Source of the DNA: Selaginella moellendorffii
Lineage: Eukaryota > Plantae > Lycopodiophyta
DNA: 64,000 nucleotides
Direction of reading: 5' to 3'
Assembly: GCF_000143415.4 (NCBI RefSeq)
Contig: NW_003314306.1
Coordinates: forward strand, 1,369,129-1,433,128
Position numbers and translations under genes: made by a program. Within the stretch, counting starts at the first letter, position 1; the number at the start of each line of letters is the position of its first letter. Under the pieces are notes generated by a model. The model was not told the origin of the DNA. It saw only the letters and a program-made list of their open reading frames with translations, and did no database searches. Below are positions 20,990 to 50,875 of this stretch, in pieces.

Positions 20990-21061
20990 GGGCATTTGGT
21001 CTAGTGGTATGATTCTCGCTTAGGGTGCGAGAGGTCCCGAGTTCAATTCTCGGAATGCCCC
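20990..21061 (+). tRNA. tRNA-Pro(AGG)
   Basis: GGGCATTTGGTCTAGTGGTATGATTCTCGCTT-AGG-GTGCGAGAGGTCCCGAGTTCAATTCTCGGAATGCCCC, a canonical 72-nt plant tRNA-Pro cloverleaf. Confidence 0.97.
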
Positions 21062-22944: not shown

Positions 22945-22999
22945 AAGATACGCTTTTGTCCTATTAAGGCACGCGGTTTTTTAATCTAGAAACAGCACA

Positions 23000-23103
23000 A
23001 TGTGGAAGTCTATATTTCTCTTGCTTCTGGCGCTTCTCCTAGTAGATGCAGACCAGCTCAAATTACATCCAGATTACCATCTCAAAGTGTTCCAGATTCC
23101 AGA
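23000..23103 (+). pseudogene. Truncated copy of the propeptide-like (I9) small gene
   Basis: MWKSIFLLLLALLLVDADQLKLHPDYHLKVFQIPE matches the 39455 copy, then runs into an antisense PPR fragment. Confidence 0.7.
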
Positions 23104-23104
23104 G

Positions 23105-27780: not shown

Positions 27781-28390
27781 AGATTTGGACCGTTCAACTG
27801 ATTTCAGCGACACATCTGGGCCGTTCATCCAGCATCAATCCGAAACACTCATCTCCAACCACCTCAAAGAATCTGGACTGACCACACCACTTGCTTGAGG
27901 AGGCATGGTTGCATGTTCTGTGAGTGATCGCCAAAGGTAGTTGATATTTTCCTTTGTGGAGCACGTCAAGGGGGTTGGGGCAGTGAGTTCTCAGCTGTTG
28001 GAGAAACCAAGTCTTGGGTGAGCAGCTAACGTTTTCCTTTGGAGATGTTGAGTTGTTGGTGAGAAGTTGTCGGTTTTGGGGCTGATTCAAGTGGATCCAG
28101 GTGCTGGGGTGAGTGTGGAAGCTGGTGTGAGTTGTCTTCATTGTCGCTGATGACGAGGTGCTCTCAGAGCAGCAGCTTTTGAGCTGGATTCGCTGGTGTG
28201 TTGTGTGTGAGGCAGCGGCGAAGTAGAGTTGAATCGTTGGAGTGTTTGTTGCTGGAGCTGGTGTTGCTGGAGTGAGCTGAGCCTGATTGTTGAGATGCTG
28301 GCTTCAGTTTCTTGCTGGGAGTTTCTCCTTCTGATCCTGACTGATCCTTGGAGCTTTCGTTTTGTTCTTCAGAGTTTGTTTGGGTTGTCC
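27251..28390. repeat. Long inverted repeat (arms ~27251-27726 and ~27891-28390, loop ~165 bp)
   Basis: The same peptide TTQTNSEEQ...PANPAxKLLL is encoded on + (27187-27477) and on - (28164-28445). Confidence 0.92.
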
Positions 28391-28494
28391 CAAAGGGTTT
28401 GGGATTTGGATCAGAAATGTCTGTGGTGAGCTCGCTGATGGACATGTACTCCAGATGCAGTGGGCTCTCAAGTTGAGAACAACCGACACTGAGA

Positions 28495-29575
28495 TATGAT
28501 GCTATGAAACGCTGTGATATAGGGATATGTGGAGTCTGGGGATGATGAGTCGGCTCTAGAGCTGTTTAGCAGGATGGAGGCTAGCATAAAGGGACTTACA
28601 TTGCCGTTTCAATGACATGCTTGAGCTTGGGAGCCGAAGAGGAAGCAACAGGTACGATGGAAAGCTTATCTATATGGCTCGTCACCATCAGGCTTGCAAG
28701 TGTGGGTTTTGAGTCGGACAAATTTGTTGGTTGACATGTGCACGACATGTGGGAGCTTAAGCTAATGCTCGAGCAGTCTTTGAGAAGATCTTACATCCGG
28801 ACATAGTGCTGTGGAACGCACTGATGCTGGATTACGTGCAAAACAGAGAGAACGAGGAGGTTCTATGCCTGTGTTTTCACTTGCAAGGACCAGACCCAAG
28901 AAGCTTCGTCACTGCTTTCATGGTCTGCACAAGCTCACAAGCGACCAGTGCCGCAATGAAAGTCTGAGAGTTTGGCTGACATCCGCTGGACAGCATTATT
29001 TCAACGAGCTCTAGAGCGATCACTGCGTCACCATTCTCTGCATATCCCAGGATAAGTGCCACCCAGAGTACACCTCATTCTATTGAAAACCAGCTCAGAC
29101 TTGCACACTTGGCATACATCTCTACCAGACTGGGAGTGAACAGCCATCCCTTGCTCAAGCTGTCTTAGCTTCACAAACTCTTCTCTCACTTCCTGGCCTT
29201 CTTCATTCTCTGCCAATGCTAGAAGCTGGCAAAGAGCTCCATGCAAAGATTTGCAGGCATGGACTGGAAGGCAGGACTTACGTAGCGAGCTCTCTGTGGG
29301 TCTTTACAGCAAGTGCGCTTGCCTTGACGATCTTGCGAGTCACTGGCAAGGAGGAAGCTCGTGGTGACTTGGAGCTCGCTCATGGCGAAAGACACGGGGA
29401 GTTGTTTGAAAGGATGCTCGACGAAGGCCTGCCAGGTGATCGTAGCGGAGCCTCATGCTAATCCAGCTCTTGATGTTTTTGTAGTGAGCCTTCACTTCCA
29501 TACCGGGGTAACCCAAGACGTCTTTTCCCACGTTGAGTGTTCTCAAGGTTTAGGCCAGTGAGAGAGCAGAAACGA
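28495..29575 (+). pseudogene. PPR pseudogene, copy 2 (no TIR element)
   Basis: Duplicate of 17330-19050. The antisense segment reads LILGYAENGDAVIALELVEIMLSSGCQPNSQTFIAALVAC. Confidence 0.8.
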
Positions 29576-31543
29576 TCCAGTGCATTCAGTAGGCGTTGTA
29601 GCTGTGCATTATCAGGACCAGGAATCCCGAGTTGGCTGCTTGTAAGAGGCACTGTGGCCGAGACATTATTCCCAGTTGAGCGTAGCCAATTGTGAAACTC
29701 ACTCTCTTGGATTCAGTAGCGTGGCCGCTGTGCAGGTTGATCGTCTCCCTGTGGCTCCAACTGTGTAGCCAATGGGGTGGCAATTGGAGCTTCCAAGCTC
29801 TCTAAGAAAGGTCCAAGATGGACATTTGTGATCTACATTACATATTCTTGTTGCAGGTGGTTATGTAGTTTCTTCAAGAGCAAAACCTGGAGGAGAGAGT
29901 GAAAGTCAGTAGGATGAAGATCTTGAGAGGTCTGATTGACCGAGGACTCTCTCCTGGAAGACGATGCCGAGGTCCACATCGTGGCAAGAAAACCTGCCAC
30001 AGTATGTAGTTGGCACGTGATTGGATCTCTGGCTGGCAGCCCACCCCAGACTCGAATCTCGATCAGAGCCCTCTTTGTACAATGGTAGTCACCATTGATA
30101 AACGCTCTGTAGAGAGAGCTTGCTATGGATGATGAACACACCAAATAAAAAGAGAGCCCTCAGACTAAGGCCATGCTTTTTCCACACACAACCGAGCGCT
30201 CTCTTTCTCGACAAATCCATTCGCAGCAAAGAGACGAGACCCACAAAGGAAACGACCCAACACTCGTTCTCGAGCTGGAAATCCTCAGGGAGATAAATGC
30301 CAAGCTGGATCAAGGATTCTCTCCCGGGACTGCATCATGCTGGATCAATCGATTGCCGGGAACAATCCGAGAGGCTGCCACTGTCCACAATATGGCGAAG
30401 GACTGAAGAGAGGGACCATTGCCGCTCTCAGAGAGGTGGCTGCTTACGTTTTGGATCACCCCGGAGCTCTGGCCGGGAAGAACGAACGGTAGACGAGGTC
30501 GTTATATCCGACTCGCCAACACTGACAAGAGTCGTCGCCGGACAGCGTGGGATTCACGTATCTCTTCTTGCTGAGTACCTTTGGCTTTGTAGAAGTGAGA
30601 CGTATGTATTTAGATTTCCTTCAAAGGTTGCAGCTTGGGTCGACTGGATCACGGCTGCCTCCAGTGGCTCGACTCCCGGCCAGAAGAATTGCAACAGCTC
30701 TTGCTCCGAGCTGGCTGTGTGAGGGCTAAGGGATCATAAGTCAGAGGATCCCAGTCTTGTTGTCAGTCGCCAGGGTCAATGGCCGGTTGTTCCCAGAGCG
30801 TTTGTCCCTCGCGGTCAAAGCTCGGTAATCCATGTCAGTCGCCATCAGACATCTGAACTGTTCCCGCTCCAAGCTCCTTGTTCTATTGCGGTTTCTTCAA
30901 CGCCGAGAAGAAAGGCGCGTTCCAAATGCAACGTCTTCGGGGAAGACACCCGAAACCTCACAACCTTCTGCCATTTCCAAGAGAGATCTTGGCTCCCTTC
31001 GCTCACCGCCATCTCCAAACAATCAAGCTCAGAGCGTCGAAGTCCTTGCCATTTGCCATGCAACTCACTGTTCTCGATAAGAGGAGAAACACTGGAAGAA
31101 CCCCCAGATCTTCGCCCAAGAACGCCTGGCCTGGCCTCGCCATGGCCAGGACGCCCAAATCGTCGCCATTCTGTGCCATCTCTCGCCAGATGCCGGGCCC
31201 ACGCGTCATCCATGCTCGCCAGTCTCGCCGTCCTCGACATGCTGAGAAGGGGAGAAACACTGTGGAAGAACGCCCGCGTCATAAATCCTCGCCATGGAAG
31301 ACCCAAATCCTCCATGCATCTCGCCATTCTCGACAGGCTAGAAGAGAAGAGAGGAAAAACACTGTGAAGAACACCCGCGCAGCTCACATTTCATTTTAGA
31401 GCGCCCAAATCCTCGCCATGAGGGGACAAAAACGTACCTGAGAGGCGCCCAGCACCGAACGCCCCACAATACTCTGATGCTGATGCTTGAAACATTCACA
31501 TCCGTACGGAAAACATGGAAATTTCGCCGACTAAAGTGTTAAT

Positions 31544-31615
31544 GGGCATTTGGTGTAGTGGTATGATTCTCGCTGAGGGTGCGAGAGGTCCCGAGTTCAA
31601 TTCTCGGAATGCCCC
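31544..31615 (+). tRNA. tRNA-Pro(AGG) copy, probable pseudogene
   Basis: Two changes relative to 20990: GGTC->GGTG in the D-stem and the invariant U33->G (loop TGAGGGT). Confidence 0.8.
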
Positions 31616-32359
31616 ATTCGTTAGATCGAGGAGCGCAGTTCCAGGAGGCTGCAAGCATATGTTCAAGGAAAATGCCAAACTGTTTCTGTTTGTCACCTGA
31701 CATCATCATCCAGAATAAAATTCCTCGTGACACATAAAGTTTTAGAATGGAACGTTCTCTCTATAGCCAGATGCCGCGTTTGATTTCTCCAAACCGGCCC
31801 ATCTTTTCTGAAGCAGGGAAGCTACTGCCTACACAAAAACACTAATAGGCAGGGATGTATTCCAACAAAATACGAAATTCCAAAGGAAGAATATGGTTTC
31901 TCCCTATTTGGCGGCACAGTCCAGAAGGCCGCAACAAGAGAAAAAATAAAGCACATTCATACGCTCTCGTGCACGACCAAAGTCAACAGTCGCTATTGAC
32001 TGAGCAGGCCCTTCCACTTTCTCCAGGACGTGTAAACGAGTGAGCGATTGCATTTACACGGGCTTGGGGACGTTCCGGCATGTTGCAATCGAGGCCTTTT
32101 TCTTGGACACGAAAGAAACTTGGCTGACGAAACATGGAGCGTTCAGGGCCAAATTCCTATTGGCATTTCCTAGATCTAGTCCAGAACAGCGGCACTTTAT
32201 TCGAGACTTTGTATCCATCTGCTGAGTAGCTTCCCACGTCGCCTTTATATTTTTAAGGACCGTTCTGGGGACCCAGGGAAGCAAATCACTCGAGGAGGAA
32301 GCAGCTACTCTATATTTTTTTTCTTTCTTGCGTCTCAAACGAAACCAGGTGTAGATTTG

Positions 32360-32757
32360 AGACGAGGAGAGATGGAGGGAACCAATCTCATACTATTGCT
32401 GTTCGTTTTTGCACAAGCCATGATCATCGCACAAGCAGGTATGTAGTTTTCAAGCGAAATCAATCGATCAGATATTGTTTTCTTTTCTTCGAGACGAGGA
32501 GAGATGGAGAGAACCAATCTCATGCTATTGCTGTTCGTTTTTGCACAAGCCATGATCATCGCACAAGCAGGTATATAATTTTAAAGCGAAATCGATCGAT
32601 TATATATTGTTTTCTTTTCTTCGAGACGAGGAGAGATGGAGAGAACCAATCTCATGCTATTGCTGTTCGTTTTTGCACAAGCCATGATCATCGCACAAGC
32701 AGGTATATAATTTTAAAGCGAAATCGATCGATTATATATTGTTTTCTTTTCTTCTAG
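32360..32757 (+). repeat. 3 x 132-bp tandem repeat of CA exon 1 plus intron 1
   Basis: ATGs at 32372, 32504 and 32636, each followed by the signal-peptide exon and its intron. Confidence 0.92.
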
Positions 32758-33697
32758 CCGAGGAGTATGACTACTCGAATGGGACTCGAGGCCAGGCAAA
32801 CTGGGGAAACTTGAGACAAGAATGGAGGGCTTGCAGCAGCGGCAGAATGCAATCTCCGGTGGACATTCAATCCGAGGAGTGTGCTCTTTGAAGCTGCTCC
32901 AGACGAGATACAAACCAACGAATGCCACTCTCACCAATCTCGACCACGACATAGCAGTATGTTATCTCCTGAATCCATCTCATCTCCGAAAGATCTCCAT
33001 CTAATCATGGCTCGGGCCCCTCGTTTTTCTTTTCTCTGTTTGCGCAATAGCTCGAGTTTGGCGATTCTTCATCGGGATCGCTCATCATCGATGGTACCTT
33101 GTACAGGGTGAGCGAGTATCACATCCATGCTCCCAGCGAGCACACTGTGAATGGGAAGCATCTCGCAGTCGAGGGGCATCTCGTCCACAGGAGTGAAGAC
33201 AACAGGCTTGCAGTCGTCGCCGTCATGTACACGATTGGATCCGAGGACGACCCTTTTATCGATCAGGTAAACAGAGATCTGGGTTTTCTTTGTGATTTCT
33301 GAGAGTTTTTTTCAAGGTTGAGCATTTTCTACCTGAGCTGAGTGGCGAGCAAGATGTTCAAGTGGTGGATCCCTCGCTGCTCAATGTTGGAGGCAAGCGA
33401 TTCTTCAGATATGTTGGATCACTAACATCACCGCCCTGCACCGAGCAAGTGACATGGAGCGTGTTGAGAAGAGTAAACAAATTATTTCCTTAATCTTTTG
33501 TTTCTTTTCCGCTGACCATGGTTCTGATGTTGCAGCCACGAACGATCTCGAAAACCCAGTACCGGATTTTGATGAATGCCCTCAATGTAAGAATTAATTC
33601 ACGCGCTAATAAACAGCTTCTAACATTCTGTGTACAGGGTGATAACAACAGATCGATACAAGGCTTGTTTGGAAGAAGAATAAGCTATTATAAATAG
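32372..33697 (+). pseudogene. Alpha-carbonic anhydrase pseudogene, copy 2
   Basis: A 10-bp deletion (CTCCAACCAG) at ~32879 frameshifts exon 2. Otherwise near-identical to copy 1. Confidence 0.88.
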
Positions 33698-33752
33698 AAG
33701 ATTCGTTTTAGTCCTATTAGGGCACGCGGTTTTTTAAGCTAGCAACAGCACT

Positions 33753-34073
33753 ATGTGGAAATCTATATTTCTCTTGCTTGTGGCGCTTCTAGATGCAAAC
33801 CAGCTCAAAATACATCCATCTCAAAGTGTTTCAGATTCCAGAACCCGAGAATATTACGCTCTATGTGGAATTGCTTAATAGGCTTCCTGGCCCAGTGCGT
33901 CCTGTCTACCTGGATCCCGTCCATTCCTTCTATGCTTTGATGACGGAAAAGCAAGCAAGCATCTTGAGGAGTAAGTATTAAAGTTGATTTTTGTTTCTTA
34001 ATTCCTTATCGTTTTTTGAAGCGAGGGCAAATGTTTCTGTGATTCTTAAAGTGAATATGCTGTGCTGTTCTAA
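33753..34073 (+). pseudogene. Frameshifted copy of the propeptide-like (I9) small gene, 2 exons
   Basis: MWKSIFL...PEPENITLYVELLNRLPGPVRPVYLDPVHSFYALMTEKQASILR, intron, then RANVSVILK..EYAVLF* after correcting a 1-nt deletion. Confidence 0.7.
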
Positions 34074-35049
34074 GATTTTTCAAGATTAACTACGATTCAA
34101 CCTATCACTATTGTTTTGCTTGTTCTCCTACAGAAAAAGCTCTTTTGACTCTCTTGTGCTTTCTGAAGACGTCTTATGCCCCAGCTGGGCGCCAGGGTCT
34201 TTTGGAGCCCAGCTGGACGTCCTTATTTATTTGATTATCTCATAGGTTAACAATAAATTTGCTATGCTTAAGTTGGACTTCAATGCAACAGGGGTGTAGT
34301 GCATTCCGTGGCACCATTCTGTTGTGGATCTCTGCCCTACATTCATCTGGCAATGGCTAGATAGATAGTGCCCGGCGGCTTCAAATCTCCAGGTCAGAGA
34401 AACATCCCGGGAAATAGGCCGGCCGTTTGCGATTGAGGACAAAAAGGAGTGATCTCGATTCACATATGAAAACATTACAACGAGTGGTGAGTTGACAGAG
34501 AAGAAAGTCTCTTTTCTTTTCCAGATGAGAGCCAAATAGCTATGACTACCACGGAAATGATGGGAAGCTCTACTTGACAGCGAGAGCATGACTTTCACAT
34601 ACTCCAGTATACAGTATTTTCGTAAGTTACTCTTGAATGCATGACGTTGAGCTTCTGAGGGATCCAGCACCAGTTAACAAATCTTTTTTTTTCTCAGTCA
34701 CAAATTTGACTGGCCTTATTTGCCAATGTGCTCAGCTCAGGCGAGGATGAAACGTAGTCGTCTTTGATGATTTTGGCAATGCAAGTCTGAGATGGCTTAT
34801 CGACGCCGGCAAAGAATCAAAGTAGGTTTAAATTTACCGGGCAACACCACTAACATTCAGGAGCGGAGGAGAGGCGATGGACTGGGGCCTTTGAGACCAA
34901 GAGCTTTGCCGGAGTACTCTTCTCATGATGGGAAAAATTAAAATTCGATAGATTAACAATTACCAGGCCTGATCTATAGAGAGCCAAGGACCAGAGAGTT
35001 CTTGGCAATAGCAAATTAAAAAATTTAACTTGAATAAAATTTCTTTTAT

Positions 35050-38000
35050 AGCTTCAAAGATACGTTAACTGTTGTAGTGAAAAATTAAAAATCCAAGACT
35101 TTAGGTGAGCAAGAATGGGCTAAAACTATTCTATGTATGTTGTTTGTTGTGGCAAGAAAACATAGGAGTATTGTTCATCCTTTGGTAAGCAATAATTTTT
35201 TTCTATACTTCGCTACATTGATTTTTGTCTCACACAGCTCCATCAATCCTTCTCCCTCTCATTCTATGGAGTAGGTCAAGGGTTTATCAGATTGTATAGT
35301 GCTTTAGAGGGGATTTTACTCACCGTATGAAGTAGAGATCTGGCTATAAAAAAGCTTTAGGCCTGTGGTTTCATCCACATGAATATGGCTAACAGTTTAA
35401 GCCACCTTCCAACACCAAGCCCAAATAAAAGAGGAAAACATGGTTTAGAAGAATGTGACTCTTGTTCCTAAAGCAAATCCCATTTTAGAAGATTTATTAG
35501 AAGCCATGATGAATATATCTGTCTACTAAAGAAAATGAGTGAAAAATAAAATGCCCGCTAAAATATATAAAATATTCTCATGATGAACTTAGACTCTAGA
35601 CAATTTTAAATTTCTTACTTTATAAGAGTTCAAATTCACATTCACCATTTCTGCCATATGAGACTGGGTTAAAAAGCGATTGATATAGCAAGTCTTGTGT
35701 GCACTCCTTGCTAGGGTAGTTTAACAAGAACAATATCTCCCTCAAGCAAGTCTAAGTTATGAGATATCGATCAAGTTAGTTATTCATTGTATAACACTAA
35801 ATCCATATTGGCTCACTCAGCTTGAATTCAAGGGAGTCACATGCAAAGTGGTGTAATTTTGAGAGCCATTTGCTATTGATTTCTGCAGAAGAAGCAATTT
35901 TCAAATTAGGAGGATTATCACTTGCAAACCAATTGATCAAGTGTGCAAGTTCTCATCTATATTATTGCTAAATTATAGGCACTCAATGAATTGTTCTAGC
36001 CGGATGATCATATAGACCTGGAAAACTTGAAGAAGCTCATCTGTGCCAGGCTAGCCAATATGCCAAGTAAAATCCTTTTCTGGTGGGGTATTTCCTGTGC
36101 CCCCTTTGTCATGGAGTGAGCAAAACTTGCCCTTTAACATGTATGCCACTTACTTTAGCTTGTCAAACAACACTTGCCACACTACTATAAACATGCATTC
36201 TTCCATGGTGTCAACATAATTATCGTGGTTGTAAGAGTTAGTTGAGATATACAATTGTAAGGTCCTCAAGAATGGTTTCCACTAACTTCTTTTGGACCTG
36301 TTTAGAGCCTTGACTTGTCACCCCTCAGAGCATGTTCATGGCGTTCCACACAGAAAATAAGGTGGACTTCAAATCCATTTCAAATACTCTGCCCTGACAC
36401 AATCTCTTGTCATCTTGCTCAGGCATCTCCCTTGCTGCTATTGCAAGCATGGCTATTGTGCACGTCCATGATACCTAGACATTGTTCTTGAACACTTGGA
36501 AAAGAAACCAACCCATGAACATTGCTTGCACATTGAATCCTTGTTAGAAAGCATTACAAAGGACTATAGAGACTTACAAAGTTTTTATAACACTCCTGCA
36601 ATCGTGTCATACTAGGCAACATCCTTGGATGTCAATAGGCACCACCTTCTCCCAGCACAAACATTCCAATTGACTACAACATAAGTGCAAATGTGAGGCA
36701 TGAAAACCATGGATGTATGAAGTTGAACTTACACTGCTTAGAACTTGATAAAGAGCTTCACACAATACATTTTGCATTGGGCCTCTGGCATCTATAGCTT
36801 GGTCCTCCAAAACAAAACTATTGCCAAGTTCTATTGTGTACATAATGTTAAGCTTTGATGTCCTTAGGTGCTGTCAAAACTAAAACTAGAAACATATGAA
36901 CTCACATCTTAAGGCAATTTGGAACAAAATTAATATTAGAGCTATACCATTAACCTTGAATTGTGCAACCATCTTTGTGCCTCTTTGTATAGTCAAAGCA
37001 TCATATTGCCAATGAGGAAACCTAAGAAATATATATACTGTGTTTTTGCTCTCTCAAACAAGTCCCTCAAACTTCAAATTACATCCTTGTTCCTACATAG
37101 GTGCCAGACAAATATGTTCAATATGAGAAAGTGTAGCGATGTAGGAATTTTAACTCATCTTCTTTCCCAGTACCAAGATGCAGTCTCCTCCAACATGTCC
37201 TCTCGCCCTAGTGAGAACATCCTAAATGCCGCCATTACAGAAGAGTCACTTGAAGTCAGCCTTGAGGACCCCTGCAGCAGCTAGGACTGGCATGGCATGG
37301 TCATTTAGCATGTGATGTAAAAAAATCTCACCACCCATTCAGACAAGTTTGGCATAGCTAACAATCATTGAAACTATATCTTCATTTCTGCAGCTTCCAA
37401 TGCCAAAGTTTCCCAACAAAACCATTGCACCAGAGTCTAGGTCATTTGTGGTCATCAACTCCATCTTTGTAGTTGCATCTAATATAGCTTTGAACTCTTA
37501 TGTGTGAAATAGACCAAATCATACATCCTCTCTACTTGCGTATTAGCATTGTTGTATTTGTCACTTATGTTGAGCCATTGTTTCTAGTTGAACAAGAACC
37601 TACATGTATTCTTATTAAACTCTATACCATGCAATTTAAGAAGACATTTATGTGGACATGTTGTTGTTGTCTAGTACTTTTGTGACTAATGTTAGTTTAT
37701 AGAATATAAAATTGAACTTACAATCCATTTGGCATAGTGCATAAAACATGTCATTTGAGTATACTTGTCAGTGAATTCTAGTCATGTGTCTTTGTTGGAG
37801 TCTAGCTAAATTGTGTATAGCTAATGTTTGCCATATTTACTGTCAACTAAAACAATATCCTATGGTTCTACAGTTGGAGTGGGAGTTGATAATCCCCTAG
37901 TTTATGCAAACATAATTCATAGAAACATTAGCCCAGACAAGATTCAATACTCTCCTAGTGGCATCTTATTATATACACCCCTCCAATTAGGATCAATGAG

Positions 38001-38320
38001 CCATATACTTCTATTGCATCAGCCTTGAAATTCCAAGGTAAGTGTCTTGAGAATTTTAAGTGGCAAAATTAATTAGACTTCTACTAAAGTTGGAGGAAAT
38101 TTTAAAATCCCTATGCAAATAACAATTTTAGTATACAATAGATTTAGTATGATAATGGATAATTTAACTTACCTCAAAAATATCTCTATCCTCAATAGTC
38201 TCACTCTCAACACTTGATTCATCATAAACACAAACCAGGTGCATTGGGAAACACCCTAGGCTAGACAGTTTTAGGAAAAAACCAATGATCTACAAACAGG
38301 AAATAAACTTTACCTCTTGT
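35050..38320 (-). other. Heavily decayed, intron-containing, Cys/aromatic-rich coding remnant, probably a DNA transposon
   Basis: Minus-strand splice-like sites and fragments such as RCNYKDGVDDHK*PRLWCNGFVGKLWHW and ALYQVLSS...YIHGFH. No intact ORF; family not established. Confidence 0.25.
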
Positions 38321-38651
38321 CATCGTCTACGGTTGAATCCCGTCTGGGGCAGCATGCATCTCGCCATTCTCGGCAGGCTAGAAGAGAAGAAAGGAGACAC
38401 TGGATGAACACCCATGCAGCTCGCATTTCTTTTTAGAGCGCCCAAATCCTCGCCATGAGGGGAGAAAAACGTACATGAGAGGCACCCAGCACCCAACGCG
38501 CAGGAAGAAAACCCATAAGATTCTGATGCCGATGCTTTATTTATTTTGGGGACCCCGCGTGCCAAAGGCCGTGCCACATTCACAACTCAAAAGGTTTTTT
38601 TCGCGTTCCACGGATCACGGCTGACTAAAGTGTTAATGGGGTTTAGGAGAG

Positions 38652-39390
38652 ATGGAGAGAATCTCATACTATTGCTATTAGTTTCTGCACAAGCCATGAT
38701 CATCACACAAGCAGGTATATAGTTTTCAAACGAAATTGATCGATCATATATTGTTTTCTTTTCTTCTAGCCGAGGAGTATGGCTACTCGAATGGGACTGC
38801 AGCTAGGCAAACTGGGGAAACTTGGGAAAAGAATGGAGGGTTTGCAGCAGCGGCAGAATGCAATCTCCGGTGGACATTCAATCTGAGAGGCTCCAACCAG
38901 TGTGCTCTTTGAAGCTGCTCCAGACGAGATACAAACCAGCGAATGCCACTCACCAATCTCGACCACGACATAGCAGTATGTATCTCCTGAATCCATATCA
39001 TCCTTGTAGCGAGTATCACATCCATGTTCACAGCGACACTGTGAATGAGAAGCATCTCGTGGGCATCTTGTCCGTCGCCGTCATGTACACCGAGTACGAC
39101 CCTTTTATCGATCAGGTAAACAGAGATCTTTAGTTTTTTTCGTCGTTTTGGTAAGGTTGCCATTTTCTACCTGAGCTGAGTGGCGAGCAAGATGTTCAAG
39201 TGATGGATCCCTCGCTGCTCAATGTTGGAGGCAAGCGATTCTTCAGATATGTTGGATCACTGACATCACCGCCCTGCACCGAGCAAGTGACATGGAGCGT
39301 GTTGAGAAGAGTAAACAAAATTATTTCCTTAATCTTTGGTTGACCCTGGTTCTCGCGCTAATAAACAGGAGAATAAGCTATTATAAATAG
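38652..39390 (+). pseudogene. Alpha-carbonic anhydrase pseudogene, copy 3
   Basis: Same exons with multiple deletions. The EGHLVH region is broken and most of exons 5-6 is lost. Confidence 0.88.
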
Positions 39391-39454
39391 ATGGGCGGGC
39401 TGCCGGGCCTATTTAGTCCTATTAGGGCAGGCGTTTTCCTAACCTAACAGCACT

Positions 39455-39801
39455 ATGTGGAAGTCTATATTTCTCTTGCTTGTGGCGCTTCTCCTAGTAG
39501 ATGCGCTCAAAATACATCCAGATCATCATCTCAAATTGTTCTTGATTCCAGAGCCTGAGAACATCACGCCCTATGTGGAATTGCTCAATATGCTTCCTGG
39601 CCCAGTGCGTCCTGTCTACTTGTGCCACGAGAAATCCATCTATGCTTTGTTGACGGAGAAACAAGCAAGCATCTTCAGGAGTAAGTCTAAAAAGTTCGTG
39701 TCTTTTTAATTCCTGACCCTTCCTTTTTTGAAGTGAGAGCAAACGTTTCTGTGGTCCTTAAGCGTGAATATGCTGAGCTTTTTTCGTCTACGGCATTCTA
39801 G
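39455..39801 (+). CDS. 97-aa secreted stand-alone subtilase propeptide (I9)-like protein; exons 39455-39680 and 39734-39801
   Basis: Signal peptide plus LLNMLPG...SIYALLTEKQASIFR/MRANVSV, collinear with the prodomain of the subtilase at 48904 (LLNGLPG...SFYALMTDKQANFLR/RRANVSV), with the same phase-1 intron. The stop falls close to the TTRTW maturation site. Confidence 0.62.
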
Positions 39802-42734
39802 TATATTCTATAATATACATTTAAATTAATCTTATTTTTATAAATTCTAATTATTTTTATAATTTGCTGTATAGATAACATAGAATATTCTACCATCTAA
39901 TGGTTGTTATTCAATTTAGTTTATAAACATATTTAAATCTTATATTATTCTATCATTTAATAAAGATTAATCTTGATTTATAAATTATAAACATGTTTAT
40001 AATTATAAATAAATTTGAATATTTATTAATCCTAAACAAAAATAACACTAAAAAAAGAATGTTCTTTTGTTGATCATTCAGATTAATCTTATTGTGTATC
40101 AACCATAGCTAGCATTTGTGTATGGTTTGATTTCTTGCTGGGGCCACCATGTGTGTGGATGGAATCTGTATATTACTGACTATTTTCTTGTTCTAAGAAG
40201 TGTTTAGGAAATCTTATAAATTATTTTTAAAATAATAATAATAATAATACTAATGTTTTATAATATCCAATCATATTCTATATCCACTACTACACAGGTT
40301 TGCTTAAGTAAACCAAAAATTTTAAACTATGTTATAAAATTAAGAAGTTAATCTGTATAGTTTATTATATTTGAAGGTTATAAATAAAACTTGGTAAACA
40401 TGTGAAATAAGTTAAACTAGCATTTTACTATAAAAGCTATATTTGTTTTTCTTGTGAAAACTATTTGAAGTTTTGTCTTTCCCATCCACTTCGACAATAT
40501 ATTTTAACTATAAAAAATTTGAAACATTTTGGCTTCACATACCAAAAATATTGACTTACTTCTTGAAGATATTTGGTTGTTCTTTCAACCATATAATATT
40601 ATTCACAAAGTTGTTAATTTGATAAATTAAACTTGCATTTTAAATTTTTCAAAACCATTTCTTACTAGGGCTAGGGTTTAAGGCAAGACAAACTTGCAAT
40701 TACACATGCAATATATAATGTTAAGAAATAACATTGAAATCTACAGAAATAGTAGGGATTGTAAAGTTGCTTCTTGGATTTGGTCTGAAATGTTCTTAAA
40801 GGTTACTTAACTCAATAGTACTCAAACTTAAACTTAAACTCGGTCTCAAGTGTTTTAGAGGTCATTTAACCCAATAGTATGCAAACTTAATGATGTTTAA
40901 CTCCAAGTATCCCAAAACATTTAACCGATTGGAAAAAAAAAGACATTCTTATTCATGGGCTATTATCCTTTATAGTTGACCCCTATTTATATTTAGTCTT
41001 GAATTCAATCTTTGTCTATATTTTGAACTCGGTCTTGAATTCGGTCTTCGATATATTAAGTCCTAGATACATCCAGCCCTAGATATATCTAATCAAACCT
41101 TTTTATTATTTGGATCTTAATTTTATAGCTAACAACATCTTAGGGAATTTATTTTTTATAGTCATCTTGTATGTGTATAACTTTATTTGGTGTTAAACTC
41201 ATAACACTCCTTTTTGTGTGTTTGTAATTTTTTATTTGTTTGAGCTGGTGACATTTTTTTTATGACTAACTGCCAATAATGAATATGTCATTATTGCTTC
41301 TGGTCTCATAACTTCTTAGGTGGAAGTTTGTGCTCTTATTAATGCATTTACAATTGCTATTAGATACTTCCTCTCTAATTGAGTAATGTTTTAGCATTCT
41401 TGTTTGAAATGAATTCTCTTAGATAATAATTTTGCATTTATGGTTAAAGTAGTTTACATCTTAATGTCTTGGCTGTTGATATACCACACTTTCATGAATG
41501 TTTAGTATCCATAAATAAATAGTTTGGTAGAATTCCTCATTTAGACCTTCAAGGGGATAATTACAAAGTATATGACTTTTAATATTTAGATTGGGATGAT
41601 TATTTATTATCTCTCTAGTACACATATGTTATGGGGGTGTAAAGTTCTATTAGTGTTTCACTATATAAACTCATATATAGTTATGCATATATTGCTAATC
41701 AATTTGAGTTTGTTTTTATGATTGTCAATGATGCTAAATCTTGAAATTAATATTTAATGAGTATTTTTCTACTGGTTCAAGTAGAGTCTATTGAATACTT
41801 AAGTCACATACAAGTGGGATAATAATAATACTACAACTCTCATATCATCCATCAATATGAATGATTTGGTGTTGGTTTATTTTTCCTAATCTTATAATAA
41901 GTGGTTTGCTTAAAGGGCTCTATACCTAATGGAAAGGACTATATTGAGTGTTGCAGCAAGTTAGATTACAAGTTTATAAGATTTGACATAGTATTTAACA
42001 AATAAATCCTCTAAAAATTATATATGTATAAAAGGATTAAAAAGAAATTACACCACCTACAAATTCAATAGTGTGTCCTCCTGGTGTTCTTCCAAATCTC
42101 AACTTATCGATAGGAGAATCTTATTTCCCTTCCATCATTTAAAGAGGAGGTGATGATATGACAATGCCATATAAAATTATTAATATAGTTTTTCATAGTT
42201 GTCAAATTGATTTTAATATGGACCACTCATTCATATATATAATCTGAGGTTATTAAGCTTATTAAATATGTACATTTCTATATTCTATACACTTAAAAAA
42301 CTTCCTTATTATGAATTAGTGAAGTATCAATTTGCTCCATCCTCATAGAACATAATTTTGTATGGCATTATGAAACTAAGCCAAGTTAGGCAGTAATTAT
42401 TATAATGCCACTTGGATACTAAAGAACCCTAAAGTTGTAATTGTCAAATATATAAAATGAAATTTCATGTTTGGTTAATTCCTATAAAATTCCCTAGGTG
42501 AAGTAATGCATAGTAGTTCTGTAATATAAAGTTATAATACTGAACGATATAATATGGTTTGCCCATTTTGCACAAATTAAATTGTTTTCTAAGAGTTTTC
42601 TTTCCATTGAATCTAAGACTTTTTGAATTTCTTCCATATCAAGCTTGTGCAGCATTTTGAAGCCAGAGGAAATTGTAGACGAACACTGTGATGCACTATG
42701 TAAAAGTTGATAAAATCAAGTCGTGAATGGTGCA

Positions 42735-45296
42735 TGTAGAACTGAGAGAATATTCCAACTTTAGCCATGTCATGATGGGGAAGTTAGAAGGAGAGAAGTA
42801 AAAAGGGATTATATATAAGGTAAGAATAAAGATGTTTGTCTTGAAGATTACCAAGAGGGAGCATACTTGGGTGCTGAGGCACATCAACACGAAAAGCAAA
42901 AAATCAGCCCAAGAACCAGAAACCCCGGCAGCCCTGCTGCTGTGTAGGTCAGCAGCAGGGCTGCCAGAGTTTCTAGTTCTTAGGCTGGTTTTTGGCTTCT
43001 CATCAACAGTATAGCTTCTTCTTGATGTGCCTCAGGACCATCATAGCCCAGGTGCACTCCCTCTTGGTCTTCAGGACAGACATACATTACATACAATCCC
43101 ACTAGTGACATGACTAAAGTTGGAATCTACATCACCCCCCACCTATTGGGCTCCGTCCCAGAGCACATAGCTCCATGGCAGCTTCATCTCACTCATGGTA
43201 CTTGCGCAAGCGAGCACCATTGACACGAGTTGGTAAGAAGTTCCCACTGAAATCTTCAAGCCGGACCGAGCCGTTAGAAAAAACTTCAACAATGCAATAT
43301 GGCCCAAGCCAGTGAACACGTAGTTTCCCATGCTTTTTTCAGTGCTTGCTATCATACAGCAGAACCACCAGCAGAAAACTGTTTAGCACGCAAATGACGA
43401 TCATACCATTGCGGCACTTCTGAAGTGCTTCGCGAGCTTGGAAAGCGAGAAGTCGACGCTCGTCGAGCTGTAGAAGCATGTCCAGTCGAGCTTGAAGAGT
43501 GTTGTCCCAGTCCAAGTTGTGCTCGACAGCCATACGGAGAGAGGGAATCTCGAGCTCAAGCGGCAGGATGGCTTCTTGTCCATAAACAAGATGGAACGGT
43601 GAAGCTTTGGTGGTGACCTTGTAAGCAACGTGGTATGCCCAGAGTGCATCGAGCAAACGGTGATCCCAATCTGTGCGAGAAGCACTTGCGAGCTTCATGA
43701 TGATGTCACACATATCTTGTTGGTGCGCACCAAGCACGAGGGTGGTAGCGATGAGCGATGCCATACTTCTCCACCAAGGTCTCGATCACTTGATTGATGA
43801 AGTGAGTATCTCGGTCACTCACCAGCTCCAAAGGGCAGCCAAATCTCATGATGATGTTCTTGTAAAGAAAAGTCGCAACCTTGGCTGTATCTTCCGTGAG
43901 AGCTTCAGCCTCGGCCCACTTTGTGACGTAGTCCATGCAAACGAGAATGTAGCGACAACAGGAAGGATGACTGGCCGGCTTGATCGGTCCCACAAAATCG
44001 ATGCCCCACTTCTCAAAAGGAAGCACCAGAAGCAGAGGATTAAGCGGCATCAGATCGCGGTGAGTTGGGCGACCAGCACCCTGGCAGGGATCACAGGTCT
44101 GAACGTAGGTAGCAACATCCTTGTGAAGCGTTGGCCACCAATAGCCAGCTTGAAGAACTAAACGAATTGTTGCCTCAGATGAAAAGTGGCCTTAAGGTGA
44201 ATTATGGCATGAAGTGCTGACAGTGTGAGGAAGGATACGGCGGCGTAGAACGTCGTCACGGCCGAGGATGTAGAGCTGGCCATGCAGGAGAGAGTATGGA
44301 CGAGCCTGGATAATAAGTCGCTTGCGTTCGGTGGCAGTAAAGTCAGCAGGGAACTCGCCGGTAGCCAGATAATCTGCAATGCCTTGATACCATTCAGGAA
44401 CAGCGTCGGCCGCAAAGCGATCGTGGTGTCGCAAGAAAACAGAGCAGCACCAGCTGGGTCATCCTCAAGATCCTGGGAGGAGGGAGGGCATGGCAATCGT
44501 GAAAGATCGGCCATGGCATGAGCGCGGCCGGGCTTCAGGATCACCTCGAAGTCGAATTCCTGGAGGATGATCAGCCAGCGGGAGATTCGACCTATGCGGC
44601 AAGGCTTGTTGACTAGGTACTTGAGTGCTTGGTGATCCACGAAAAATTTGAAGTGTGTGCCCAACAAATACTTCTGAATAGCAAAGATCATGAGGAGCAC
44701 CAAGGAATCCTCCCTTTGCCATCTTCGTCGAGTGTAGGGTGATCGATGCCCCCCGGCTGGCAAAGAACAGCGCAGAAGCATCCACGTGGACGTGGAAAAT
44801 AACTGTCCAGTCAGGAACGGCTAAAATCGGAGCAGTGATCAGAGCTCCCCGGAGAAGCTCGAGTGTCCACTCATAAGGCACGAGAGTTTCGTCAGAGGCA
44901 AAGCTTTAGTCACGAAGTTGTAGATGAAGCGTCGATAGTAGCCAACACGTAGTCAAAGTGTAGTTTGATTGAAACAAGATCTTTTTTAAGGCAAGTTCTT
45001 CACAATAGCCACCTTAGCTGGATCCACAGCTAATCCTTCCCGGGCAGTGCACCAGTGAAGACTGGGAGGTCTAATACCTACCGAAGCTTAACTTGGCCTG
45101 CTACTAAGGTTTTTGGTTCTTGGGCTAGTTTTTTGCTTCTTGATGGCACAGCCTTAACACCATCAGGCGTACTCCTTCTTGGTAATCTTCAGGACAGGCA
45201 TTTTTATTCTTACGTCACATACAATCTCCTTTTACTTCTCCCTGTCGTGACTTACTACTGACGTGGCTAAAGTTGGAATATTCTCTCAGTTCTACA
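42735..45296 (-). mobile_element. Internally deleted Ty3/gypsy element: 5' LTR 45296-45056, PBS 45054-45037, RT end / RNase H / integrase remnants, PPT 43143-43132, 3' LTR from 43131, plus an extra inverted LTR at 42735-42942
   Basis: GYYRRFI, FHVHVDAS, YLLGTHFKFFVDHQALKYL, PFEKWGIDFVGP and WLGPY. LTRs start TGTAGA. PBS TGGTGCACTGCCCGGGAA resembles the complement of a tRNA-Gly 3' end. Confidence 0.85.
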
Positions 45297-45309
45297 GTGC
45301 ACCAAGCGG

Positions 45310-46332: not shown

Positions 46333-48904
46333 TTATGCTTTGACAACAAATGGAAGGCGAACTTTATATCCAGGATGTTTGTAAGCATAGCACCTCCACA
46401 GAAGTGACCCAAATAGTGTTCCAGTGATAGTAGTGTCATTCAGAGAGAAAGTTATAGATATAGTTATCACTTTCACGCCTTCTTCCAGATCAAAAACCAT
46501 ATGTGGTGCTTCCACGTTCAATTCAGAAGGAATGTCATGCTTTAGAAAGTGATAGAATAGGTAATCCTTGGGTAGAGGTGGAAAACTAACCACTGTGAAT
46601 GTCCGTTTAACCACAACTTTCTGGCTTTTTAATAGCGTCACAACTATGGATGGATAGTTGCAATCTTTGCAATCCAGGTCGTTTTCGATAAAATCAGTGA
46701 AATCCAGCACTAAACCTGGTTCCATTGCTTCACTTGGATTAATAAAACCAGCCCCCATGGCATAAGGTGTTGCCACTTTTTCATCGAAATCCTTGATAGG
46801 TTCTCCTGTATTGTCTAATGGAGAGGCTGTGGTCATAATTGCAGATTTGATCATTGCTGGGGACCAAGTTGGATGTAAAGTTTTTAGCATGGCTACTATA
46901 GCAGCAACTTGAGGCGTCGCCATCGATGTACCACTTAGAAACTTGAACGATCTTTTAGCATCATCCTTTGGAAGCCAAGAAGCTAAAATATCCACACCCG
47001 GGGCAATGATATCAGGCTTGATGATTGAGAAATTGGGTGAACCTCTTGATGAAAATGCTGCCACTCGGGGAGCTGGAGTCAGTCCAGTAAGAGTTTTTAT
47101 CTTTGAAATTATGGCACCAGGTGATCTACAAAAGTGCACGAATGATATAAAATAAACTATAATCAACATAACTCACCTTGCTGTTTTGAGGAAATCATTA
47201 AGAATATCAGCCTCGCTAAAACTGACATAGAATATGGGTTTGAGCCCTCGATAGTCCTGCCGTACTATGAAGGGGGTGTGTACCAAAATAACTGCTGCAG
47301 CTCCTCCCCAATAAAGTGCTGCATTAGCACTGTTGCTTTCGTGGCAAATGACAATCTTTCCTTGCATATTCTCACGACTTTCTTTGCAAAACCTGCATAT
47401 AACTCTTTTAGACTGAAACTAAATATTGTGGAAGTATCAAGATATTACCGTCCCCAGGTATGAGTCGTTGAGCTGTACGTTAAGTTAAACGTATCGAACC
47501 TTAGGAAGGAGTCTTCAGGCCATATAGCTCCCTCACTGAGTGATGTAACTTGAATTGTTTTGGAAAAATGTTGATCGTCGTCCCAAAGCTCCATTTCAGC
47601 TATAAAGTCCCTATCCAGTGTGCAAGCTCCAACTGTCAGCAGCCATGGCGCCTGGTTTGATAGCTCTCCATACGGTCCTTCGTTTCCAGCAGCCGCCACA
47701 ACTGGTATTCCTTTTTTCTGCGCTAAGAAACCACCCCTACTACCAGCATCGTGTCCTAGCCCAGCGCCCAAAGACAGGGATATAACATCCACACCATCAC
47801 GTATGGCACTTACAAAAGCGTCGAATACGTCAGCATAGTTGCATCGGTTCCAGCATGCTTTGTAGATTGCGAGCCTGCAAAGTGGAGCTCCTCCCACAGC
47901 CATACCAGAGGCTAAACCTGTGTTGTGGACTTGCCTTCCTCCTACTGTTGATGCACAGTGCGTTCCATGGCCCTTTGTGTCGATAGGAGAGCGAATGTCG
48001 CTTGCTGCCAAAGAGTAGTTGACGTCCAAGTATGCTTGTACTCGCCTTGCGTTTCCAAGGAAGAACCTAGCTCCAATAACTTTCCTGCAGAAAGAAAGAC
48101 AAACAAATGGCTCTAGGAGAAGACTAGAAGAAAGAGAAAACACGATATATACAAACCGATTGCATGTGTAGCTTTGGAATTGTTGTCCCGCCTCACAAAT
48201 GCCTTTCCACCTCTTGGGGGCTCGAGACATGTCTTTGTCTCGAAAGGCTTCTAACCCCGGCGAGAAGCCTGGAAAAATCATAAACTTTTAACTTCAAAAG
48301 AAAGAGAATGATCAATGTACACAAACCTGTATCTATAACTCCAATGATTGAGTCACTGCCATACCCAGTTTGGGCCCAGAGAGACGTGTCTCCGGGGTTG
48401 AAGAGATAATTTGGATCATAGTCTGCTGACCTCCATATGCGGGAGCTGGAGTCAGACAGGTTTTTCTTCGCCATCGAGTCATCACCCCATTGACCAGAAA
48501 CGCCATCGATTCCACCGATGAACTTCCACGTCCGCGTTGTTTCAATGTACGAGTCAGGCGCTGAATGCACTGAAACATTCGCTCTTCCTGCCAAAGTAGA
48601 GCAAACAAGTTACGTATAAAATCTGGAAACAAAGGCTATGGAGCTTACTTCGGAGAAAGTTGGCCTGCTTATCTGTCATCAAAGCGTAGAAGGAACCTTG
48701 GCTAAAGCTCTTGATGTGCACAGCCTGCCTTTGCCCAGGAAGTCCATTGAGCAACTTGAGATGCGCAAGTTGGTCGAGGGATGCAAGCTCCTGGAATGAT
48801 TCGAAGTGGTCCTGCCCCGGGAGCGAGACTAAGAACGGCTTGAGCTGGTCCTCCATTCTCGCATCTGCCAGGAGCACCAGGAGCACAAAGAAGAGACGAA
48901 ACAT
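46333..48904 (-). CDS. Subtilisin-like serine protease (S8A, SBT), 6 exons (48904-48649, 48587-48327, 48268-48157, 48084-47449, 47392-47177, 47125-46333)
   Basis: Signal peptide, I9 prodomain, TTRTW, IIGVIDTG (Asp), GHGTHCAST (His), AAGNEGP, PA domain GKIVIC, SGTSMATP (Ser) and a fibronectin-like tail. Frame-preserving GT-AG introns. Confidence 0.93.
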
Positions 48905-49591: not shown

Positions 49592-49718
49592 CTACCCCGC
49601 AACTGGACACGGCTTTACAACCTGCCACGCACCATTTACACACCTGAGTCTCAGCTTCCTGTATGACCTCGTTGCTTCTTCAATCTTCTTCCTCTTTCTT
49701 TCCTGCTGCTGCCGCTGC

Positions 49719-49756
<38 letters not shown>

Positions 49757-50875
49757 GACACTACCACCTCGATCTGATACCCACTTGCCGTTGAGCCGCT
49801 TGAGCTTCACAATCCTCGTCCTGGGAACAAAGCCACCTTCCTCCGTGTGCTTGAGCACCCAAGGATGCGTTTGAATCTGCTGCGTCGTCAAGCGCTTCTT
49901 TGGATCCAGGCACAGCATCCCCAAAATCAGCTCTTTGGCCTCCAGCCCGACGCCGGACCAGTCGAGCATATCAGCCGGCATGTCGACCCATCTCAGCCTC
50001 TCGAGCACGAACTCCGAGTCGAGCCCCGCAAAGGCCGTCAACCCGGACAGCGCCTCGTAGAGGATGAGCCCCAGTCCCCATATATCCACCGCCTGGTCGA
50101 ATCTACTGTCCCTCACCACCTCGGGGGCCAAGTACTTGGTTGTTCCAACGATGTGATCCAGCTTACCACCGGTGGACGCCACCGAGAGCCCAAAGTCGGC
50201 AACCTTGACGTCGTATGGAAAGGAGTCCCTAGAGAGGAGGATGTTTGGAGGCTTGAGATCCCTGTGGATAATCCCCAGAGCGTGCAATCCCTGCACAACC
50301 TTAGCCAAGCCTTTTATGAGAAGCGCAGCCTCCCTCTCACAAAGCCCTCGCTCTCTCTGGATCCTATCATGCAAACTGCACGCACACAACTCAAGCACAA
50401 GATGCCACACGCGATTATCATCTACAATTACCTCCACGAGGCTCACGGCACCACCACCTCCTCCTCCACCTGTAATCCCCTTTCCTCCACCACCGCCGCC
50501 TCGAAATCTCACGCCGCCGTTGCTCTGGATCAGCTTCATGATCGACACCTCCTGCCGCACCAGATCGAGCTCGCGGGATTCCTCCACCCTCACGCTCTTG
50601 CACGCAAACAGCCGCCCATCGCTCAGCCGCCTCACCTGGAAAACCCTGCCCTGGCCGCCATCGCCGATCTGGTACTCGATCGCGTACTTGCGCGACAGAT
50701 TGGGGAACGCCATGTCGTCGATCGACGAGAGCGACGAGGATTCCGTGCGATCGCCGTCGCCTCCGCCGCGGTCGCGCTCCGCAGCGCTCCTTTTTCTCAC
50801 CGCCATAGCCAAAACGACGCGTAACAAATCAAGAAAACCCTGATAGGAAGGCATCTTTTTGAACTGGATGACCAA
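49592..50875 (-). CDS. Intronless Ser/Thr protein kinase, CAMK group (CDPK/PPCK-related, no EF hands), with a Gly-rich insert and a polyQ tail
   Basis: IGDGGQGRVF, FACKS, HRDLKPPN, DFGLS, GTTKYLAPE and DIWGLG; 427 aa. The true start may be a later Met. Confidence 0.9.
49703..49755. repeat. CAG/CAA trinucleotide repeat (polyQ) in the kinase
   Basis: ctgctgctg...tgttgctg run. Confidence 0.9.

What the first reader, a model, noticed from the sequence alone, without database searches (positions are those of the whole stretch)
39455..39801. Stand-alone subtilase-propeptide (I9) gene family next to a related subtilase: a candidate protease/inhibitor pair
Seen: splicing 39455-39680 to 39734-39801 gives a clean 97-aa protein (signal peptide plus prodomain). 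It is collinear with the N-terminus of the subtilase at 48904-46333 and has the same phase-1 intron. The subtilase reads RANVSV-HSAPDSYIE-TTRTW, this copy reads RANVSV-VLKREYAEL-FSSTAF*, and the frameshift-corrected copy 2 reads RANVSV-ILKxEYAVL-F*. Both stop at or just past the maturation site, and no catalytic domain follows any of the three copies. Known: excised I9 propeptides inhibit subtilases, and Arabidopsis SPI-1 is a free-standing example. Inference: this is a locally derived secreted inhibitor matched to the neighbouring subtilase clade, not just debris.
Basis: partly seen in the sequence, partly recalled or inferred. Interest (0 to 1): 0.72.

Follow-up and report, generated by a model that had tools for sequence, protein, structure and literature searches.

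The report
Prodomain-only subtilase gene stump family
A spikemoss protease gene lost everything but its signal peptide and inhibitory prodomain, and the stump was copied at least nine times; eight copies are broken or have lost the promoter's TATA box, but the one studied here is intact, transcribed and correctly spliced, so it may still make a small secreted protease inhibitor, which is unproven.

Summary
Joining 39455-39680 to 39734-39801 (GT..AG, 53 nt, phase 1) gives a 97-codon ORF. It is collinear with the start of the subtilase at 48904-46333 and has its intron at the same place and phase. No catalytic domain follows any copy.

New here:
- The window is Selaginella moellendorffii scaffold GL377610.1.
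- The stump sits behind an alpha-carbonic-anhydrase gene and was copied with it. There are three copies in the window, two in an inverted arm about 50 kb away, and four on scaffolds that appear to be the other haplotype.
- Every B/C-type copy is broken. Two of the four A-type copies are frameshifted. A third has an open frame but has lost its TATA box.
- Only the window's copy A keeps TATA, ORF and splice sites. A 280-nt contig in run X1 matches it exactly with the intron removed. Three deep RNA runs show almost nothing.
- A/B divergence is biased to synonymous changes (omega about 0.2, P about 0.001). Recent changes look neutral.
- Pfam Inhibitor_I9 is not matched, and no relatives were found outside this species.

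Verdict: a birth-and-death family of truncated duplicates with one live-looking survivor. The inhibitor reading is plausible (about 0.3) but unproven. The scan had no earlier follow-up of this stretch.

The parts
39382..39389 (+). TATAAATA box 66-73 nt upstream of the ATG of copy A
   Evidence: Read. Conserved in B and C. Changed to TATCAA in A' and A'' and deleted in A'''.
39455..39680 (+). Copy A exon 1: signal-peptide-like start (about 17 aa) plus most of the prodomain, 75 codons + 1 nt
   Evidence: Covered by the X1 contig 39454-39680 with no mismatches.
39681..39733 (+). Copy A intron, 53 nt, GT..AG, phase 1
   Evidence: The X1 contig skips exactly 39681-39733 (table 5).
39734..39801 (+). 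Copy A exon 2: RANVSV strand, a 15-residue tail and TAG
   Evidence: The X1 contig covers 39734-39786. The stop aligns with the TAA of B-type copies.
33753..34075 (+). Copy B, pseudogene: an 8-nt deletion in exon 1 shared by all four B-type copies, plus a private 1-nt deletion in exon 2
   Evidence: Fused to the upstream CA gene in public model P0006.
23000..23104 (+). Copy C, first 35 codons only, then a deletion
38353..39341 (+). Dead alpha-carbonic-anhydrase copy (unit 3) directly upstream of A. It has frameshifts, a 127-nt gap, and lacks the last CA exon, which lies at 22784 and 33536 in units 1 and 2
   Evidence: (loose ends, indels).
46333..48904 (-). Full-length plant-type subtilase with the same phase-1 intron. 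The D, H, N and S motifs can be read. Public model is 992 aa, spanning window 49635-45627
39802..45300 (.). AT-rich DNA (26-33% GC) and a decayed Ty3/gypsy-like pol fragment between A and the subtilase
   Evidence: An rve gene is called at the matching place in L005.
27965..44521 (.). Left arm of an inverted segmental duplication on GL377610.1. The right arm is L001, and the spacer is about 40 kb

Best explanation
Copy A is the best-preserved member of a Selaginella moellendorffii family of prodomain-only subtilase stumps, and the family is dying out.

Origin (inferred from shared ends): a subtilase of the same clade as the neighbour lost everything after its prodomain. What remained was a TATA promoter, a signal peptide, exon 1, the phase-1 intron, about 20 codons of exon 2, and a stop a few residues past the predicted maturation site. 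This stump lay just behind an alpha-carbonic-anhydrase gene.

Spread (shown): tandem and inverted segmental duplications copied it together with that gene. The reference assembly holds at least nine copies.

History: for part of it the stump was under protein-level selection (shown by synonymous-biased divergence). Recently the copies drift. All five B/C-type copies are broken, two A-type copies are frameshifted, and one has lost its TATA box.

The window's A still has promoter, ORF and splice sites and gives a correctly spliced RNA in at least one sample (shown).

My commitment: A is a dispensable survivor with little or no present function. If it is translated, it would be a secreted protein of about 80 aa that binds subtilases of its parent clade as their own prodomain does (inferred by analogy).
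For: Location: the window is GL377610.1.

Copies and lesions.

Truncation predates the A/B split: both types end at the same place with aligned stops, and no S8 remnant follows any copy checked, in the window or in L001 and L002.

Past constraint: 17 synonymous and 15 nonsynonymous differences, omega 0.21. Simulations give P 0.0004-0.002. Fixed differences by codon position are 8/6/17.

Present drift:
- Indel events in A run at 5.8 per kb against 4.2-6.3 per kb in the flanks.
- A-type copies differ by six nonsynonymous codons against one synonymous, and by two independent frameshifts.
- Overall A/B exon divergence (12-17%) is no lower than that of neighbouring introns (8-19%), whereas CA exons in the same units differ by 2-3%.

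Expression: the spliced X1 contig has depth 16.5 and no mismatches. Depth on A in runs X13-X15 is at most 1.5.
Against: - The ORF of A has stayed open over an A/B divergence of 13-20%, in a region where indels are frequent. That is unlikely under pure drift.
- A alone keeps its TATA box. I could assign no derived nonsynonymous change to its lineage with certainty; its Ala-versus-Val difference from the other A-type copies is of unknown direction.
- The stop position is kept through a TAG/TAA difference.
- The ORF ends almost exactly at the prodomain boundary.

All of these fit a gene that is still alive.
Confidence: 0.5

Rival explanations
1. One reading: A is a living gene for a secreted, free-standing prodomain-like (I9/SPI-1-like) inhibitor. 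After signal-peptide removal the roughly 80-aa protein folds like a prodomain, docks on the catalytic domain of subtilases of its parent clade (the neighbour being the closest known), and lays its C-terminal tail in the substrate cleft. The other copies are redundant duplicates that decayed.
For: - Intact ORF, TATA box and exact splicing in RNA.
- Synonymous-biased divergence from B.
- Only the copy next to the subtilase stays whole with its TATA box, while the two A-type copies L001 and L002, which share a right flank and look allelic, broke independently.
- The ORF stops within a few residues of the predicted maturation site, and the stop position is conserved.
- Language-model feature search puts the A-type piece and the subtilase's exon 1 nearest to Inhibitor_I9 clusters, with scores 0.92 and 0.89 (leads only).
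- SPI-1 shows that such inhibitors exist in plants (PMC11371169).
Against: - No Pfam I9 match.
- No relatives outside this species among 1.84 billion cluster representatives.
- Near-zero reads in three deep RNA runs.
- Recent evolution of the A-type clade looks neutral.
- Only 43% identity to the neighbour, with a 13-residue gap in the first-helix region.
- The tail after RANVSV has no detectable DNA homology to the subtilase.
- No biochemical data.
Confidence: 0.32
2. The stump was never functional as such. The synonymous bias was imported by gene conversion from full-length, selected subtilase paralogues elsewhere in the genome, and the transcript is leftover promoter activity.
For: - Overall A/B exon divergence equals the local neutral level, and pS (0.34) exceeds intron divergence.
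- The region is prone to conversion and duplication.
- Closer full-length paralogues could not be searched for, because the protein library holds only cluster representatives and the word search is limited by length.
Against: Intron and upstream DNA of A and B align colinearly with divergence similar to the exons, as expected from simple descent. No donor was found.
Confidence: 0.1
3. The fragments are 3' exons of the carbonic-anhydrase genes, as in the public chimeric models EFJ18429.1, XP_024520581.1, SELMODRAFT_430002 and SELMODRAFT_420338.
For: Four public models join CA exons to A- or B-type sequence.
Against: - RNA reads from the expressed CA paralogue leave the exon at 39310 for the CA's own last exon, which lies at 33536 in unit 2.
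- X1 covers A but not the CA copy upstream.
- The models enter the fragments downstream of the frameshifts, which suggests a gene-finder artefact.
- A has its own TATA box and ATG.
Confidence: 0.04

Closest known systems
Arabidopsis SPI-1 (subtilisin propeptide-like inhibitor 1; Hohl, Stintzi and Schaller 2017, cited in PMC11371169)
   Same: A free-standing small plant protein related to subtilase prodomains, with no catalytic domain. It would act by binding mature subtilases.
   Different: No sequence similarity to any I9-only plant protein was found. A arose independently and recently from a local subtilase clade, is confined to one species as far as searched, and most of its copies are pseudogenes. 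SPI-1 has a measured picomolar Ki; A has no data.
Cis prodomains of plant subtilases (Pfam PF05922 Inhibitor_I9; Meyer et al. 2016, cited)
   Same: Collinear with the neighbour's signal peptide and prodomain, with the same intron phase and the shared RANVSV strand.
   Different: Nothing follows the prodomain. There is a 13-residue gap in the first-helix region. The tail after RANVSV is not detectably homologous. Neither A nor the neighbour's exon 1 reaches the Pfam model.
Fungal free-standing I9 inhibitors (yeast PBI2, Pleurotus POIA1; from my own knowledge, not checked here)
   Same: Prodomain-like proteins that inhibit subtilases in trans.
   Different: Another kingdom, old conserved genes, no detectable similarity.
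Truncated duplicate (unprocessed) pseudogenes carried along in segmental duplications
   Same: A 5' piece of a parent gene copied together with a neighbouring gene. Most copies carry frameshifts and deletions.
   Different: One copy keeps promoter, ORF and splicing and is transcribed. The older divergence is biased to synonymous changes.

Membership tests
Pfam PF05922 / MEROPS I9 prodomain-type inhibitors | Match to the Inhibitor_I9 profile | tested here: not met
   No family at E up to 10 for A exon 1, B, A exon 2, or the public join P0001:112-189. The neighbour's own exon 1 and exon 2 also fail.
Pfam PF05922 / MEROPS I9 prodomain-type inhibitors | Homology to the N-terminal prodomain of an S8 subtilase | tested here: met
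   43% identity to exon 1 of the neighbouring Peptidase_S8 gene, same intron phase and place, shared RANVSV.
Pfam PF05922 / MEROPS I9 prodomain-type inhibitors | Beta-alpha-beta-beta-alpha-beta fold | tested here: inconclusive
AlphaFold2 on P0001:112-189 without an alignment gave pLDDT 55.5. It shows a helix, a hairpin and a helix, but the last strand is not formed. Feature searches point to I9 clusters, as leads only.
Pfam PF05922 / MEROPS I9 prodomain-type inhibitors | Inhibits a subtilase | not testable with these tools
   Needs recombinant protein and an assay.
SPI-1-type free-standing plant inhibitors | Stand-alone ORF with no catalytic domain downstream | tested here: met
   No S8 remnant after any copy in the window or in L001 and L002.
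SPI-1-type free-standing plant inhibitors | Transcribed and spliced as a separate gene | tested here: met
   The X1 contig joins 39454-39680 to 39734-39786 with depth 16.5 and no mismatches, and X1 gives no cover on the CA copy upstream. Expression is very low in X13-X15.
SPI-1-type free-standing plant inhibitors | Orthology or sequence kinship with SPI-1 and its homologues | tested here: not met
   A profile of A, B and the subtilase's exon 1 found only two S. moellendorffii chimeric models and one low-complexity false hit among 1.84 billion representatives.
SPI-1-type free-standing plant inhibitors | Kept intact among paralogues and alleles | tested here: not met
   Of nine copies, one is intact with a TATA box, one has an open frame without a TATA box, and seven are broken.
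Truncated-duplicate pseudogene | Disabling lesions or neutral evolution in the copy itself | tested here: inconclusive
   A has no lesion. Old divergence gives omega 0.21. Recent changes and indel density look neutral.

The most novel reading that the evidence does not exclude
Copy A is a young stand-alone subtilase inhibitor that evolved independently of SPI-1. It was born when a subtilase duplicate was cut almost exactly at the prodomain boundary. It is kept beside the closest surviving protease of its clade, and its redundant copies are caught in the act of dying. That would be a natural example of how propeptide-like inhibitors arise.
Probability: 0.28. Interest if true: 0.55.

Novelty: new member of a known kind. 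Interest (0 to 1): 0.38.

Why it matters
Free-standing prodomain-like inhibitors of plant subtilases are known from SPI-1, but their origin and their targets in the plant are open questions (PMC11371169). If A works, it shows a simple route to such an inhibitor, partial duplication of a protease gene, and offers a ready candidate pair to test, since the closest detectable subtilase lies 6.5 kb away. If it does not work, it is an ordinary truncated duplicate. Its practical value is then to flag four public gene models, one of them named 'alpha carbonic anhydrase 7', as chimeras of carbonic-anhydrase exons and subtilase-prodomain debris.

Tried and rejected
- Pfam on each exon peptide and on the public join P0001:112-189: no hit.
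- Word search for proteins of 41-131 aa: none.
- Solved-structure sequence search with the subtilase's exon 2: only chance-level hits.
- AlphaFold2 on the 78-aa public join: too uncertain to use for a fold search, so no fold search was run.
- Local alignment of the subtilase's exon 2 against A and B plus their downstream DNA: homology ends about 28 nt into exon 2, and scores are within the shuffled range.
- GC-to-AT asymmetry as a way to assign changes to lineages: not informative.
- I first read L001 and L002 as alleles of A and took their frameshifts as evidence that both alleles are broken. Searches corrected this: L001 is an inverted paralogous arm on the same scaffold as the window.
- I could not fetch the flank of GL377687.1, so I cannot say whether A''' (L005) is the allele of A.
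- The Hohl et al. 2017 paper is not held in the library.
- Exons were used one by one, and the only joins used are those in public proteins P0001 and P0005.
- Read laying was given 4,001 letters.

Full report
**What is at the coordinates.** Copy A starts with ATG at 39455. Exon 1 runs to 39680. A 53-nt GT..AG intron (39681-39733) lies in phase 1. Exon 2 (39734-39801) ends in TAG. That makes 75 codons, a junction codon and 21 codons, 97 aa in all. The start looks like a signal peptide: one Lys, twelve hydrophobic residues, then Val-Asp-Ala. A TATAAATA box lies at 39382-39389.

The gene at 48904-46333 (-) is a full plant-type subtilase. Its large exons match Peptidase_S8 and fn3_6, and the Asp, His, Asn and Ser motifs can be read. 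Its first intron sits at the same place and phase as the intron of A, and both second exons begin with RANVSV.

**Copies and their setting.** A self-comparison shows three tandem units. Each is an alpha-carbonic-anhydrase (CA) gene followed by a stump:
- unit 1, 18193-23104, carries copy C;
- unit 2, 28719-34069, carries copy B;
- unit 3, 38353-39782, is partial and carries copy A.

The CA copy of unit 3 is dead. It has frameshifts and a 127-nt gap, and it lacks the last CA exon, which lies at 22784 and 33536 in the other units. No subtilase catalytic remnant follows any copy in the window.

**Whose genome, and more copies.** A profile of the exon-1 peptides, searched against 1.84 billion cluster representatives, returned only two real hits. 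Both are Selaginella moellendorffii models that fuse CA exons to stump sequence: EFJ18429.1 and XP_024520581.1. A single-exon kinase ORF of the window (49595-50806, -) is encoded letter for letter on GL377610.1. This places the window at record position = window position + 1369128.

The locus of EFJ18429.1 (L001) lies on the same scaffold, inverted, with its A-type copy about 49.5 kb from A. The window region 27965-44521 and L001 are therefore the arms of an inverted segmental duplication. The spacer of about 40 kb holds the subtilase, the kinase, TraB, Macro and DUF3419 genes. Two more arms lie on GL377679.1 (L002) and GL377687.1 (L005), apparently the other haplotype. The assembly thus holds at least nine copies: four A-type, four B-type, and C.

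**State of the copies.**
- A (window): TATA box, ORF and splice sites all intact.
- A' (L001): 4-nt deletion in the signal peptide; TATA changed to TATCAA.
- A'' (L002): 7-nt deletion in exon 2; TATCAA.
- A''' (L005): open 98-codon frame, but the TATA region is deleted, the intron is cut to 42 nt, and the first 21 codons carry four private nonsynonymous changes and no synonymous one.
- All four B-type copies share an 8-nt frameshifting deletion. Three of the four (B, B', B'') also carry private deletions; B''' has none.
- C stops after 35 codons.

Neither L001 nor L002 holds a catalytic remnant; L005 was not included in that search. The public annotation calls no gene at A. A fourth chimeric model, SELMODRAFT_420338, fuses the CA gene of unit 2 to B.

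**Expression.** One run of uncertain type (X1, contigs) holds a 280-nt contig at depth 16.5. It equals 39454-39680 joined directly to 39734-39786, with no mismatch. X1 shows nothing on the flanking 4 kb apart from a 30-nt repeat match, so it behaves as RNA, and A is transcribed on its own and spliced as predicted. The contig carries the window's variants, not those of A', A'' or A'''.

Runs X2-X4, from a second study, hold 12-27% of the sampled words. Three deep stranded RNA runs (X13-X15) give a depth of at most 1.5 on A. The same runs give 20-30 on CA reads, which cross-map from the live CA of unit 2: their loose ends equal 33536-33565. The 3' end of the transcript was not seen.

**Selection.** Over 73 alignable codons, A and B differ at 32 sites: 17 synonymous and 15 nonsynonymous. 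That gives pS 0.34, pN 0.089 and omega 0.21. Simulations that keep the kinds of base change expect about 9 synonymous differences (P 0.0004-0.002). Fixed differences between the A and B clades fall 8/6/17 on codon positions 1/2/3. A and B also end at aligned stops (TAG against TAA) and differ there by an in-frame 15-nt piece. The truncated ORF is therefore older than the A/B split, and part of its later history was under protein-level selection.

Three results weigh against this:
- Overall exon divergence (12-17%) is no lower than that of the intron, the upstream DNA or the CA introns (8-19%). CA exons in the same units differ by only 2-3%.
- Among the A-type copies, six codons changed nonsynonymously against one synonymously.
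- Indel events hit A as often as its flanks: 5.8 per kb against 4.2-6.3 per kb.

The recent phase therefore looks neutral, except that I could assign no derived nonsynonymous change to the window's A itself; its Ala/Val difference from the other A-type copies is of unknown direction.

**Is it an I9 domain?** By position, yes. By profile, no. Pfam gives nothing for A, for the public join P0001:112-189, or for the neighbour's own exons 1 and 2, so the prodomain of this clade is very divergent. Language-model feature searches put both the A-type piece and the subtilase's exon 1 nearest to Inhibitor_I9 and other subtilase-prodomain clusters, with scores of 0.92 and 0.89 and low shared-feature counts. 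These are leads only. AlphaFold2 without an alignment was too uncertain to use (pLDDT 55.5). DNA homology to the subtilase ends about 28 nt into exon 2. Aligning the tail (..EYAEL..) with the subtilase's ..SYIE|TT junction is therefore a reading, not a result.

**Verdict.** The most likely picture is a birth-and-death family of truncated duplicates that hitch-hiked with a CA gene. It was once constrained and is now decaying, and the window's A is the only copy that still looks alive (confidence 0.5 that it has little or no present role). It works like SPI-1 and cis prodomains (PMC11371169), but A is not a member of the SPI-1 lineage. Gene conversion from selected paralogues (0.1) and CA-stump chimeric genes (0.04) are less likely.

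Earlier notes of this scan supplied the species name, which I confirmed through accessions. No earlier follow-up of this stretch exists.

Noticed in passing
window 27965-44521 and L001 6-15564 (GL377610.1 about 1397093-1413649 and 1453826-1469384): An inverted segmental duplication of about 16.5 kb. The arms differ by roughly 2% in substitutions and by many indels. The spacer of about 40 kb holds the subtilase, a kinase, and TraB, Macro and DUF3419 genes.
   Followed up: partly
P0001 (EFJ18429.1), P0003 (XP_024520581.1, 'alpha carbonic anhydrase 7'), P0005 (SELMODRAFT_430002), P0006 (SELMODRAFT_420338; window 32636-34234): Four public gene models are chimeras that join carbonic-anhydrase exons to subtilase-prodomain fragments, entering the fragments downstream of their frameshifts.
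   Followed up: partly
window 49595-50806 (-) and 49635-45627 (-): A single-exon protein-kinase gene with poly-Gly and poly-Gln runs. The public 992-aa subtilase model starts inside its 3' end and runs 700 nt past the stop I read at 46333, so that model is probably over-extended.
   Followed up: no
window 33536-33620 and P0006: Even the expressed CA gene of unit 2 seems to lack the usual C-terminal end of alpha-CAs after its last exon (..PRTISKTQYRILMNALN). The stump begins about 130 nt further on, so the subtilase fragment may have replaced the original CA 3' end.
   Followed up: no
L005 11688-17318, against window about 40598: A 5.6-kb insertion in the AT-rich DNA downstream of the A-type copy, present only in the GL377687.1 arm.
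   Followed up: no
window 1055-2310 against 24901-23651, and 18-1052 against 9851-8760: Inverted repeats of 1.1-1.3 kb at 69-80% identity, probably transposon remains.
   Followed up: no
window 39620-39638 against 33910-33928: Nine of the A/B differences cluster in 19 nt (CHEKSI against DPVHSF). This looks like one complex event or a small conversion tract rather than independent substitutions.
   Followed up: no
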